A DNA stretch of 64,000 bases from Octopus bimaculoides (lineage: Eukaryota). The DNA lies in contig NC_068990.1 of NCBI RefSeq assembly GCF_001194135.2, positions 69,590,975-69,654,974 of the forward strand, written 5' to 3'. The notes below the pieces were generated by a model. It was not told the origin of the DNA and ran no database searches. It saw only the letters and a program-made list of their open reading frames with translations. The translations under genes and the position numbers were made by a program. Below are positions 40,325-41,709 of this stretch, in pieces; within the stretch, counting starts at the first letter, position 1, and every line of letters begins with the position of its first letter.

Positions 40325-41096
40325 NNNNNNNNNNNNNNNNNNNNNNNNNNNNNNNNNNNNNNNNNNNNNNNNNNNNNNNNNNNNNNNNNNNNNNNNNNNN
40401 NNNNNNNNNNNNNNNNNNNNNNNNNNNNNNNNNNNNNNNNNNNNNNNNNNNNNNNNNNNNNNNNNNNNNNNNNNNNNNNNNNNNNNNNNNNNNNNNNNNN
40501 NNNNNNNNNNNNNNNNNNNNNNNNNNNNNNNNNNNNNNNNNNNNNNNNNNNNNNNNNNNNNNNNNNNNNNNNNNNNNNNNNNNNNNNNNNNNNNNNNNNN
40601 NNNNNNNNNNNNNNNNNNNNNNNNNNNNNNNNNNNNNNNNNNNNNNNNNNNNNNNNNNNNNNNNNNNNNTATATATATATATATATATATGTAATTGTCA
40701 TTAAATGTGACTAGAGTGTTAGAAACACCTGTATTGGTAGAAATAACAGCTAAACTGCTCTAATGCTGTAGATAACGCACATAAATGTAAACATGTACAT
40801 TAATAGTCCGAAAATGCCGATCGAGAATTCCTAGTACTGACATCACTTTCCACTATTTCTGTTCACCATCAGTTAGTGGCTCGAAGTTCGGCTCTTTTCG
40901 AACTCGCTTCTCTATTAGTATATATATTTTCGTTATCCAAAATCAATGGATAGTTTAGCGATTCAATAATGTGTATGCATCATATCAATTTTATGTATAC
41001 ACATTAATGAATCGCTAAATCATTCATTGAGTTGGATGATGAAAGCATATATAATAATATAGAAGCGTGTCCGAAAAGAGCCGAACTTCGAGCCAC

Positions 41097-41146
41097 TCTT
41101 AACTGATGAGGCAACGGAAATTGTCGAAACTGTCGTCAGTATAAGG
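41097..41146 (+). ncRNA. Type I hammerhead ribozyme, near-canonical
   Basis: UCUUA(A)-CUGAUGA-GGCAA(CGGAAA)UUGUC-GAAA-CUG(UCGU)CAG-UA-UAAGG: canonical core, 5-bp stem II, 4-bp stem III with tetraloop, GUA triplet; stem I has one extra A; predicted cut between 41141 and 41142. Confidence 0.7.
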
Positions 41147-41451
41147 AATTCTTGATCAGCATTTTTCGGACTATTAAGGTCCCTGTTAGCGTATATGTTT
41201 ACATTTATGTGCTTTGACTACAGCAGTAGAGCATTTTAGCTCTTATTTCTAGCAATGTAGGTGTTTCTAACACCCAAGTCAGGTTTAGGGACAGTTATAA
41301 TTTTCCTTTTTTGGTGGAACACTGAAAACTGCTGTTTATATTTATTTTATGTATACACATTAGCGAATCGCTAAATCATCCATTGATTTGGATGACGAAA
41401 CATATATACTAGTAGAGAAGTGTGTCCGAAAAGAGCCGAATTTCGAGCTAT

Positions 41452-41502
41452 TCCTAACTTATGAGGCAACGGAAATTGTCGAAACTGCCATCAGTATAAA
41501 GA
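41452..41502 (+). ncRNA. Second-unit hammerhead copy, probably inactive (core CUUAUGA, G5U)
   Basis: Stems II and III are identical to copy 1; the stem III loop differs (CCAU vs UCGU). Confidence 0.5.
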
Positions 41503-41709
41503 ATTCTCGATCGGCATTTTTCGGATTAATAAGGTTAATGTTAGTGTATATATTTACATTTATTTGCGTTGACTATAGCAGTAGAGCATTTCAGCTCTTA
41601 TTTCTAGTAATATAAATGTTTCTAACACGCTAGTCACATTTAGTGACAATTATAATTCTCCTTTTTGGTGAAACACTACAAACTGCTGTTTATATTAATT
41701 TCATATATA

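What the first reader, a model, noticed from the sequence alone, without database searches (positions are those of the whole stretch)
40691..41700. Candidate retrozyme: ~355-bp tandem unit, each carrying a hammerhead ribozyme
Seen: two direct ~355-bp units, a head-to-head inverted partial unit, and a further fragment 39 kb away (1268-1350), so the family is dispersed. Unit 1 has a canonical CUGAUGA/GAAA core, a 5-bp stem II and a 4-bp stem III with a GUA triplet. Unit 2 keeps both stems but changes the stem III loop (UCGU to CCAU) and has a G5U core mutation; the inverted unit is more decayed. The motif caps a long imperfect hairpin (tccgaaaagagccga...tcggcatttttcgga). Known: non-LTR retrozymes in animals are 170-400-bp tandem non-coding repeats with one type I HHR per unit that yield circular RNAs, and PLE pseudo-LTRs occur as tandem plus inverted copies. 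Inference: this is a non-autonomous ribozyme retroelement, possibly undescribed in cephalopods, whose multimeric transcripts would self-process into ~355-nt monomers or circles.
Basis: partly seen in the sequence, partly recalled or inferred. Interest (0 to 1): 0.85.

Follow-up and report, generated by a model that had tools for sequence, protein, structure and literature searches.

The report
Decayed hammerhead-bearing tandem repeat in octopus
A roughly 1-kb block of 355-bp non-coding repeats inserted into a microsatellite of an octopus-like genome looks like an old, mostly dead copy of a retrozyme-type mobile element, a kind already known in mussels and other animals; only one of its three copies still has an intact hammerhead-ribozyme-like motif, and that match is borderline.

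Summary
The island holds a 355-bp tandem repeat (2.1 copies, 86 % identical) at 40982-41714 and a head-to-head inverted copy (79 %) at 40692-40989. A 75-bp fragment lies at 1273-1347. Unit 1 carries a complete hammerhead core (41103-41141).

New here: both flanks are the two halves of one abundant interspersed repeat. In its other copies an internal (TA)n(TG)n microsatellite is uninterrupted, so the block is a true insertion into a microsatellite. That target, and the tandem-plus-inverted layout, are typical of Penelope-like elements.

The ribozyme evidence is weak:
- Rfam gives no hit at gathering score (best 17.9 bits against 48.5).
- A model built from three validated retrozyme ribozymes ranks the motif first in the window, but at only 17.9 bits (E about 0.009).
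- Helix I has an A·A mismatch beside the core.
- A hairpin that buries the CUGAUGA box is 8 kcal/mol more stable and equally well kept in the three copies.
- Unit 2 (G5U) and the inverted copy (A9G) have mutated cores, so this locus cannot release monomers or circles.

No further copies could be fetched, so the family consensus is untested. The best reading is a decayed retrozyme-like, PLE-mobilised element (confidence 0.5): a new member of a known kind, of modest interest.

The parts
40278..40691 (.). (TA)n microsatellite, interrupted by the assembly gap at 40325-40669. It is the left border of the insertion and belongs to the host repeat's internal (TA)n(TG)n tract.
40692..40989 (-). Inverted, 3'-shortened copy of the 355-bp unit (unit positions about 3-316), joined head-to-head to unit 1. 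It is 79 % identical to the direct units. Its core reads CTGATGG (A9G; + strand c at 40866), and helices I, II and III are broken.
40982..41337 (+). Unit 1 of the tandem array (356 bp, 36 % GC).
41069..41172 (+). Long imperfect hairpin of unit 1, whose tip holds the hammerhead-like motif. The minimum-free-energy fold is -35.4 kcal/mol and pairs ACUGAUGA with UCGUCAGU. The hammerhead-constrained fold is -27.4 kcal/mol.
41095..41149 (+). Type I hammerhead-like motif of unit 1. Helix I 5' strand 41095-41102; CUGAUGA 41103-41109; helix II 41110-41125; GAA 41126-41128; helix III 41129-41140; A17 at 41141; helix I 3' strand 41142-41149. The predicted cleavage site is 41141/41142.
   Evidence: Descriptor scan; model R1 gives 17.9 bits, E about 0.009; Rfam Hammerhead_3 gives 17.9 bits against a gathering score of 48.5.
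41338..41693 (+). Unit 2 of the tandem array, 86.5 % identical to unit 1 and 32 % GC.
41450..41504 (+). Degenerate hammerhead-like motif of unit 2. The core reads CUUAUGA (G5U at 41460). Helices II and III are intact and loop 3 is CCAU. Model R1 scores it 9.3 bits, E about 3.
41694..41714 (+). First ~20 nt of a third unit. This is the right (3') end of the array, at the same unit position as the 3' end of the fragment at 1273-1347.
   Evidence: (D7)
41714..41780 (.). (TG)n microsatellite. It is the right border of the insertion and runs into the gap at 41781-41980.
40100..40277 (+). Left part of the host interspersed repeat into whose microsatellite the block is inserted.
41981..42075 (+). Right part of the same host repeat copy.
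1273..1347 (-). 5'-truncated fragment of the family (unit positions 289-363, 89 % identical to unit 2). Its 3' end abuts (TA)n. It does not cover the ribozyme region.
35261..35360 (-). Weakly related fragment (unit positions about 213-316, 69-74 % identical, nhmmer E = 1e-5), bracketed by (TA)n. Membership of the family is uncertain.

Best explanation
The block at 40692-41714 is an old insertion of a small non-coding, non-autonomous retroelement of the retrozyme / Penelope-like (PLE) type. It sits in the (TA)n(TG)n microsatellite of an older interspersed repeat in an octopus-like genome.

Its 355-nt unit folds into a highly self-paired RNA. At the tip of its longest hairpin the family ancestor most probably carried a type I hammerhead ribozyme.

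Proposed mechanism (inferred by analogy, not shown here): master copies are transcribed as multimers. The hammerhead cuts once per unit, and the monomers are ligated into roughly 355-nt circles. A PLE reverse transcriptase then copies the circular or multimeric RNA. Priming would occur at a nicked TA-rich microsatellite, through microhomology with the unit's own TA-rich segment. This would produce tandem units together with an inverted partial copy.

The copies at this locus have since decayed by 13-21 %. Unit 1 still has a complete catalytic core, though with an imperfect helix I. Unit 2 (G5U) and the inverted copy (A9G) are predicted to be dead. The locus itself can therefore no longer release monomers or circles.
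For: Shown here:
- The array has a 355-bp period, 2.1 copies and 86 % identity. GC is 32-36 %.
- It has no coding capacity. The longest open frame is 83 codons and has no relatives among 5.8 billion proteins.
- The putative monomer folds with z = -4.6.
- The block is an insertion. Its flanks, 40100-40277 and 41981-42075, are the left and right parts of one repeat. At least 5 other copies of that repeat in the window have a contiguous (TA)n(TG)n tract at exactly this point.
- The array and the independent 5'-truncated fragment at 1273-1347 end at the same unit position next to a microsatellite. This is as expected for target-primed reverse transcription.
- Unit 1 has all 13 core nucleotides, a G10.1-C11.1 pair, an A15.1-U16.1 pair and a GUA cleavage triplet.
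- It is the only descriptor hit in the window, against 0.003 expected.
- It is the top hit, in the correct type I register, of a covariance model built only from validated coral, mussel and axolotl retrozyme ribozymes: 17.9 bits, E about 0.009.
- Each decayed copy differs from the canonical core at one position only, so the three-copy majority consensus has a complete core.

From the literature:
- Metazoan non-LTR retrozymes are 150-450-bp low-GC tandem repeats with a type I hammerhead. The mussel units are 350-390 bp and lack the archetypal loop-loop contacts (PMC7229834).
- PLE insertions are partial tandems with an adjacent inverted 5'-truncated copy, and they prefer microsatellites, including (TA)n (PMC8557442).
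- Animal retrozymes appear to derive from PLE pseudo-LTRs (10.64898/2026.07.22.740005).
- Octopus genomes hold Penelope-like elements, with an expansion at JC about 0.2 and some recent activity (PMC13282606).

The window is octopus-like: a LINE remnant is 88 % identical to an O. bimaculoides protein.
Against: - Rfam finds no hammerhead at gathering score in the window, and none at E <= 10 on the 1.1-kb island. On 131 nt the best score is 17.9 bits against a gathering score of 48.5, in the wrong permutation.
- The home-made model's score is only about 5 bits above the window's noise, and its E-value is rough.
- Helix I has an A·A mismatch at the second pair. All four validated retrozyme ribozymes read from the PMC7229834 supplement have at least 6 contiguous pairs from the core outwards.
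- The minimum-free-energy fold pairs the CUGAUGA box into an 8-bp helix and is 8 kcal/mol better than the hammerhead fold. That helix is kept in 8/8, 6/8 and 7/8 pairs across the copies, at least as well as helices I-III.
- The ribozyme segment is no more conserved than the rest of the unit.
- Both strands fold equally well, so the self-pairing could be a DNA-level palindrome.
- Only three copies cover the motif, and two of them are tandem duplicates of each other.
- The inverted copy is more diverged (21 %) than the two direct units are from each other (13.5 %). A single insertion event does not predict this without later homogenisation or duplication.
- The array ends do not coincide with the predicted cleavage site.
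- No PLE reverse transcriptase or GIY-YIG ORF was seen among the window's ORFs of at least 90 aa.
Confidence: 0.5

Rival explanations
1. This is a hairpin-rich non-autonomous retroposon, or a young minisatellite-like repeat, that never had ribozyme activity. The CUGAUGA...GAAA...GUA arrangement in unit 1 is a fortuitous by-product of a long imperfect hairpin. The CUGAUGA box is simply the strand that pairs with UCGUCAGU.
For: - The alternative 8-bp helix is perfect in unit 1 and kept in 6/8 and 7/8 pairs in the other copies. It includes U·G to U-A and G-C to G·U changes that preserve pairing.
- The alternative fold is 8 kcal/mol more stable.
- Rfam hammerhead models do not reach a third... they reach only 17.9 bits against a gathering score of 48.5.
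- Helix I is imperfect, and two of three copies have core mutations.
- The motif is not conserved above background.
- At about 0.003 chance hits per 64-kb window, a genome of a few gigabases would hold on the order of a hundred chance descriptor matches. A hairpin context raises that rate further.
Against: - The chance hit would also have to fall inside the roughly 1.3 % of the window that is a tandem repeat of retrozyme-like unit size, GC content and fold, arranged and targeted like a PLE insertion.
- All 13 core positions are canonical in the three-copy majority consensus.
- G10.1-C11.1, A15.1-U16.1 and the GUA triplet are all in place.
- The motif is the best hit in the window for a model trained only on validated retrozyme ribozymes, and in the correct register.
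- In units 1 and 2, the hammerhead register of helix I (6/8 pairs each) holds at least as well as the slipped hairpin register (5/5 and 3/5).
Confidence: 0.33
2. This is a DNA-transposon-derived foldback element or MITE. It inserted at a TA dinucleotide within (TA)n, and its palindromic structure reflects inverted repeats rather than RNA structure.
For: - Both strands fold equally well: z = -4.6 and -5.7.
- The inverted copy and unit 1 together form a palindrome with arms of about 300 bp. Rfam's generic long-hairpin miRNA-precursor models hit it on both strands.
- All copies abut (TA)n.
- The weak fragment at 35261-35360 is bracketed by a 10-nt inverted repeat.
Against: - The 5' and 3' ends of the unit, as defined by the array end, the head-to-head junction and the fragment at 1273-1347, are not inverted repeats of each other.
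- The family shows a direct tandem arrangement and a 5'-truncated copy sharing a common 3' end. These are marks of reverse transcription, not of cut-and-paste transposition.
- The fragment at 1273-1347 runs straight across the point where a foldback element bounded by the palindrome arms would end.
- Target-site duplications cannot be assessed, because the borders are microsatellites and gaps.
Confidence: 0.08
3. This is an assembly artefact. The 1.1-kb island between two gaps is a chimeric short-read contig that strings together different genomic copies of a dispersed repeat. The tandem and inverted arrangement does not exist in the genome.
For: - The island is bounded by N gaps on both sides, and the window has 17 gaps, nearly all in microsatellites.
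- Repeats and palindromes are classic sources of misjoins in short-read assemblies.
Against: - The three copies differ by 13-21 %, so they are not a collapsed or duplicated read path.
- The junctions are clean and in register over 2.1 units.
- The outer borders match the two halves of the host repeat's microsatellite in the correct order and orientation. A random chimera would not reproduce that.
Confidence: 0.05

Closest known systems
Metazoan non-LTR retrozymes (Cervera & de la Peña 2020, PMC7229834), especially the Mytilus galloprovincialis family with 350-390-bp units
   Same: Both are tandem non-coding units, and the unit size here (355 bp) falls in the same range. Both have low GC and a highly self-paired monomer. 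Both carry one type I hammerhead-like motif per unit, at the end of a long helix, with canonical-size helices II and III rather than the minimal PLE form. The host is also a mollusc, and its genome also holds PLEs.
   Different: Only one of the three copies has an intact core. Helix I has an A·A mismatch next to the core, whereas the validated coral, mussel and axolotl ribozymes have at least 6 contiguous pairs. There is no sequence similarity to the mussel unit beyond the core. Only 2.1 units are present. Expression, cleavage and circularity are all untested. The criterion of two consecutive complete motifs for an active retrozyme is not met.
Penelope-like element insertions and their pseudo-LTRs (PMC8557442; Cervera & de la Peña 2014)
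   Same: Both show a partial tandem arrangement with an adjacent head-to-head inverted copy. Both insert into microsatellites, (TA)n in particular, so that target-site duplications are obscured. Both have a hammerhead motif in the repeated part.
   Different: The repeated unit here is only 355 bp and has no RT/GIY-YIG ORF. PLE hammerheads are usually minimal (helix III of 1-2 bp, acting as dimers), whereas helix III here is 4 bp. The inverted copy is more diverged than the direct units are from each other.
Amphibian satellite 2 and Schistosoma Sm-alpha hammerhead repeats (classical type I hammerheads, Rfam RF00163)
   Same: Both are tandem or SINE-like repeats of about 330 bp that carry a type I hammerhead.
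   Different: Rfam's hammerhead models do not recognise the octopus motif: 17.9 bits or less against gathering scores of about 48. No loop 1-loop 2 tertiary contact motif could be identified.

Membership tests
Metazoan non-LTR retrozyme | Short tandem repeats, unit about 150-450 bp, from dimers to multimers | tested here: met
   TRF gives a 355-bp period, 2.1 copies and 86 % matches at 40982-41714; confirmed by blastn.
Metazoan non-LTR retrozyme | Low GC content (below 45-50 %) and no coding capacity | tested here: met
   GC is 36 % and 32 %. The longest open frame is 83 codons, with no relative in the protein database.
Metazoan non-LTR retrozyme | Type I hammerhead with an intact catalytic centre (CUGANGA / GAAAY / RUH) in the units | tested here: inconclusive
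   Unit 1 has CUGAUGA / GAAAC / GUA intact. Unit 2 has CUUAUGA (G5U). The inverted copy has CUGAUGG (A9G). The majority consensus of the three copies is intact. Three decayed copies are too few to establish the family consensus.
Metazoan non-LTR retrozyme | [quoted passage not shown] | tested here: not met
   Unit 2 carries G5U at 41460 and scores 9.3 bits, E about 3, with model R1.
Metazoan non-LTR retrozyme | Perfect helix topology (helices I, II and III all formed around the core) | tested here: inconclusive
   In units 1 and 2, helix II is 5/5 and helix III is 4/4. Helix I is 6/8 in the hammerhead register, with an A·A mismatch at 1.2/2.2, or 5 bp with a bulged A. The competing hairpin is 8 kcal/mol more stable.
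Metazoan non-LTR retrozyme | Highly self-paired monomer RNA | tested here: met
   The 355-nt monomer from cut site to cut site folds at -100.8 kcal/mol, z = -4.6. The complementary strand folds equally well, z = -5.7, so this feature is not specific to an RNA function.
Metazoan non-LTR retrozyme | Self-cleavage, and accumulation as circular RNA of about unit length | not testable with these tools
   No transcriptome or wet-lab data are available here.
Metazoan non-LTR retrozyme | Mobility: dispersed copies and insertions | tested here: met
   The block interrupts the (TA)n(TG)n tract of a host repeat that is uninterrupted in at least 5 paralogous copies. A 5'-truncated fragment at 1273-1347 shares the same 3' end.
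Rfam hammerhead families (clan CL00010) | Score at or above the family's gathering threshold | tested here: not met
   No hit in the window at gathering. None at E <= 10 on the 1.1-kb island. Hammerhead_3 gives 17.9 bits against 48.5 on 131 nt, aligned in the wrong permutation.
Penelope-like element (autonomous) | ORF encoding a reverse transcriptase, with or without a GIY-YIG endonuclease, between the pseudo-LTRs | tested here: not met
   The unit is 355 bp with no ORF. There were no RT or GIY-YIG hits among the window ORFs scanned.
Penelope-like element (insertion architecture) | Partial tandem plus an adjacent inverted truncated copy, with microsatellite target bias | tested here: met
   The layout is inverted copy 40692-40989, then direct units 40982-41714, lying between (TA)n and (TG)n. 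The literature description is in PMC8557442.
MITE / foldback DNA transposon | Terminal inverted repeats and a fixed-length target-site duplication | tested here: inconclusive
   The inferred unit termini are not inverted repeats of each other. Target-site duplications cannot be read, because the borders are microsatellites and gaps.
SINE (tRNA-, 5S- or 7SL-derived) | Pol III-type head related to a small RNA gene | tested here: not met
   ARAGORN finds no tRNA in the window. There was no tRNA, 5S or 7SL hit at E <= 10 on the island.

The most novel reading that the evidence does not exclude
Octopus genomes harbour a still-active family of 355-nt hammerhead retrozymes, the first in cephalopods. 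Their master copies would be processed into abundant circular RNAs and mobilised by octopus Penelope elements, specifically into (TA)n/(TG)n microsatellites. The microsatellite-bearing SINE-like repeats that fill this genome would then act as landing pads.
Probability: 0.2. Interest if true: 0.5.

Novelty: new member of a known kind. Interest (0 to 1): 0.3.

Why it matters
If the family consensus proves to carry a working hammerhead, this would extend retrozymes to cephalopods. It would also give a clean example of such an element caught inside a microsatellite with paralogous empty sites. That would support the idea that retrozymes ride on the Penelope-like integration machinery. Octopus nervous tissue is known for active retroelements and heavy RNA processing, so an abundant ribozyme-made circular RNA there would be worth knowing about. 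As it stands, the locus is a decayed copy of a kind of element already described in other molluscs. Its main value is as a query for a genome-wide census.

Tried and rejected
Attempts to obtain more copies of the family all failed:
- An nhmmer profile of the three copies against the window found only the five pieces already known.
- Searching the 83-codon pseudo-peptide that spans the ribozyme of unit 2 against 5.8 billion predicted proteins found no candidate.
- An exact-pattern scan for AAGAGCCGAAYTTCGAGC gave 34 metagenome loci and 32 prokaryotic genome loci. blastn of the unit against all of them found nothing. The one locus with an inverted double hit, L003, is GC-rich bacterial DNA.
- I tried to reach octopus contigs through a LINE-derived ORF. 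The closest relatives are a UniRef O. bimaculoides entry with no contig and sub-kilobase ENA contigs such as L001, 743 bp. Octopus genomic DNA therefore seems to be absent from the searchable collections, and I did not spend the third protein search.

Other negative or uninformative results:
- Rfam hits to plant miRNA-precursor families (MIR7533 and others) match both strands of the head-to-head palindrome. They score far below gathering, so they are generic long-hairpin matches, not miRNA genes.
- Pfam on eight plausible ORFs of the window gave nothing above threshold.
- The SINE reading of the 355-bp unit has no support: no tRNA-like or 5S-like head was found.
- The four-sequence alignment of validated ribozymes (A2) misplaced the GAAA box of axolotl Ax330. 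I dropped that sequence rather than edit it (A3).
- I could not run a leave-one-out control of model R1 on the validated ribozymes, because models can only be searched against the window and fetched loci.
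Full report
**What is there**

The finding lies on a 1,110-bp island (40670-41780) between two assembly gaps. Tandem Repeats Finder calls a 355-bp period from 40982 to 41714, with 2.1 copies and 86 % matches. blastn and MAFFT give four results:
- Unit 1 (40982-41337) and unit 2 (41338-41691) are 86.5 % identical.
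- A head-to-head inverted copy at 40692-40989 is 79 % identical.
- A 75-bp fragment at 1273-1347 on the minus strand is 89 % identical to the 3' end of unit 2.
- A weak 100-bp relative lies at 35261-35360.

A profile search of the whole window adds nothing more. The units have 32-36 % GC. They have no meaningful ORF: the longest open frame is 83 codons and has no relative among 5.8 billion proteins. This includes the predicted cleavage site 41141/41142, G5U in unit 2 (T at 41460) and the loop change UCGU to CCAU.

**The organism**

A LINE-derived ORF in the window (33067-33348) has as its best named relative an Octopus bimaculoides protein, at 88 % identity.

**The block is an insertion**

This is the main new result. 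The sequence left of the block (40100-40277) and right of it (41981-42075) each belong to an abundant interspersed repeat, with at least 8 and at least 11 matches in the window respectively. In every other copy the 'left part' and 'right part' lie in the same order and orientation, 140-270 bp apart. They are separated by an internal microsatellite of the form (TA)n(TG)n followed by a conserved middle segment.

At this locus the (TA)n is on the left of the block and the (TG)n is on its right. The whole ~1-kb block, inverted copy plus 2.1 direct units, therefore sits exactly at the TA/TG boundary of that microsatellite. The other copies act as paralogous empty sites. The 200-N gap on the right hides the middle segment.

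The array's right end and the independent 5'-truncated fragment at 1273-1347 stop at the same unit position, about 20 nt into the next unit. Both stop next to a microsatellite. Both arms of the head-to-head junction start at the same unit position. A common 3' end, 5' truncation, tandem plus inverted copies and a microsatellite target are what the literature describes for Penelope-like elements (PMC8557442). They are not what cut-and-paste transposons produce.

**Is there a hammerhead?**

Arguments for:
- Unit 1 has all 13 core nucleotides (C3 U4 G5 A6 U7 G8 A9, G12 A13 A14, A15.1-U16.1, A17). It also has a G10.1-C11.1 pair, a 5-bp helix II and a 4-bp helix III.
- An explicit descriptor scan of both strands finds this site and no other. 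The expectation is 0.003 per dinucleotide-shuffled window.
- I took the sequences of experimentally validated retrozyme ribozymes (coral Amil224, mussel Mg353, axolotl Ax353) from the supplement of PMC7229834. I built a covariance model from them and searched the window with filters off. The unit 1 motif is the top hit, in the correct type I register, at 17.9 bits and E about 0.009. This E-value is rough, and window noise reaches 13 bits.
- Each of the two other copies departs from the canonical core at one position only, so the majority consensus of the three has a complete core.

Arguments against:
- Rfam finds nothing at gathering score in the window, and no hammerhead at E <= 10 on the island. 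Given only 131 nt, it finds Hammerhead_3 at 17.9 bits against a gathering score of 48.5, aligned in the wrong permutation.
- Helix I has an A·A mismatch at the second pair, or a bulged A if slipped by one. All four validated ribozymes have at least six contiguous pairs starting at the core.
- The minimum-free-energy fold of unit 1 pairs ACUGAUGA with UCGUCAGU in a perfect 8-bp helix. It is 8 kcal/mol more stable than the fold constrained to the hammerhead.
- Across the three copies that competing helix keeps 8/8, 6/8 and 7/8 pairs. Helix I keeps 6/8, 6/8 and 3/8. Helix II keeps 5/5, 5/5 and 3/5. Helix III keeps 4/4, 4/4 and 3/4. The copies therefore do not discriminate between the two structures.
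- The ribozyme segment is no better conserved than the rest of the unit.
- The 355-nt monomer is strongly self-paired (z = -4.6), but so is its complement (z = -5.7).

**What follows for function**

G5 is an essential core nucleotide, and A9 pairs with G12 (established hammerhead biochemistry). Unit 2 (G5U) and the inverted copy (A9G) should therefore be inactive. A transcript of this locus could be cut at most once, so it cannot release a 355-nt monomer or circle. The criterion used in 10.64898/2026.07.22.740005 for an active retrozyme, at least two consecutive complete motifs, is not met. Whatever the family does, this locus is a fossil with 13-21 % divergence. That is close to the JC distance of about 0.2 reported for the Penelope-like expansion in octopus (PMC13282606).

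**Weighing it**

By itself the motif is a borderline hit of the kind a gigabase genome yields by chance on the order of a hundred times. What lifts it is the coincidence with an independent set of features:
- a tandem unit of the size, GC content and fold of known invertebrate retrozymes (mussel: 350-390 bp; PMC7229834);
- an insertion architecture and target typical of PLEs;
- a host genome known to carry PLEs.

I put 0.5 on 'decayed copy of a hammerhead-bearing, PLE-mobilised retrozyme-like element'. I put 0.33 on 'hairpin-rich retroposon with a fortuitous motif', 0.08 on a foldback or MITE-type DNA element, and 0.05 on an assembly chimera. The decisive datum, the consensus of many copies, could not be obtained. 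None of the searchable collections appears to hold octopus genomic DNA.

**Comparison with what is known, and novelty**

Functionally and structurally the closest known system is the metazoan non-LTR retrozyme, already shown in a mollusc. The insertion architecture matches PLE insertions. Membership is not established. The unit size, GC content, non-coding nature, self-pairing and mobility criteria are met. The intact-motif and helix-topology criteria are inconclusive. The two-consecutive-motifs criterion and the Rfam thresholds are not met. Cleavage and circularity are untestable here.

I found no paper reporting hammerheads or retrozymes in cephalopods. However, retrozymes are said to occur in many invertebrate phyla, so at best this is a new member of a known kind. 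Interest is modest (0.3). The useful products are the 355-bp query for a genome-wide census and the clean microsatellite empty-site comparison.

Noticed in passing
13618-14022 (-), 21343-21863 (+), 27742-28107 (+), 31764-32209 (+), 40100-40277 with 41981-42075 (+), 50005-50425 (+), 54911-55081 (-), 57597-58001 (-); right-part-only pieces at 216-310, 4718-4772, 56501-56561, 63372-63413: An abundant SINE-like interspersed repeat with a built-in (TA)n(TG)n microsatellite of variable length; in the copy at 21343-21863 the tract has expanded to about 200 bp. Neither Rfam nor ARAGORN recognises it as tRNA-, 5S- or 7SL-derived. It is the host of the 355-bp insertion, and many of the window's assembly gaps fall in its microsatellite.
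   Followed up: partly
42814-42950: A degenerate telomere-type array (TTAGGG / TTAGG-like units, 65-79 % matches) lies about 1 kb downstream of the block, an interstitial telomere-like repeat. I found no link to the 355-bp element.
   Followed up: partly
35228-35382: The weak relative of the 355-bp unit (35261-35360) is bracketed by (TA)n on both sides and by a 10-nt inverted repeat (ctgccttctt / aagaaggcag). It keeps the unit's small hairpin AGAGC/GCTCT as AGAGT/ACTCT, a change on both sides. It may be a separate small element that shares one module with the 355-bp family.
   Followed up: no
32884-33348 and 22331-23203: LINE-type ORF remnants. The C-terminal 94 aa at 33067-33348 are 88 % identical to an O. 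bimaculoides protein and 55-66 % identical to uncharacterised proteins of many invertebrates (shrimp, beetles, corals). It is preceded by long poly-I and poly-R low-complexity translation from an (ATT/AAG)-type simple repeat.
   Followed up: partly
46860-47823 (-): Two adjacent ORFs of 139 aa and 96 aa have a gag-like feel but no Pfam hit above threshold and no exact match on record. They are probably a decayed retrotransposon.
   Followed up: partly
whole window (17 N runs, 7,376 N): The assembly is highly fragmented, and nearly every gap is flanked by (TA)n, (TG)n or similar microsatellites. Any repeat that targets microsatellites will therefore be systematically under-assembled in this genome version.
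   Followed up: no
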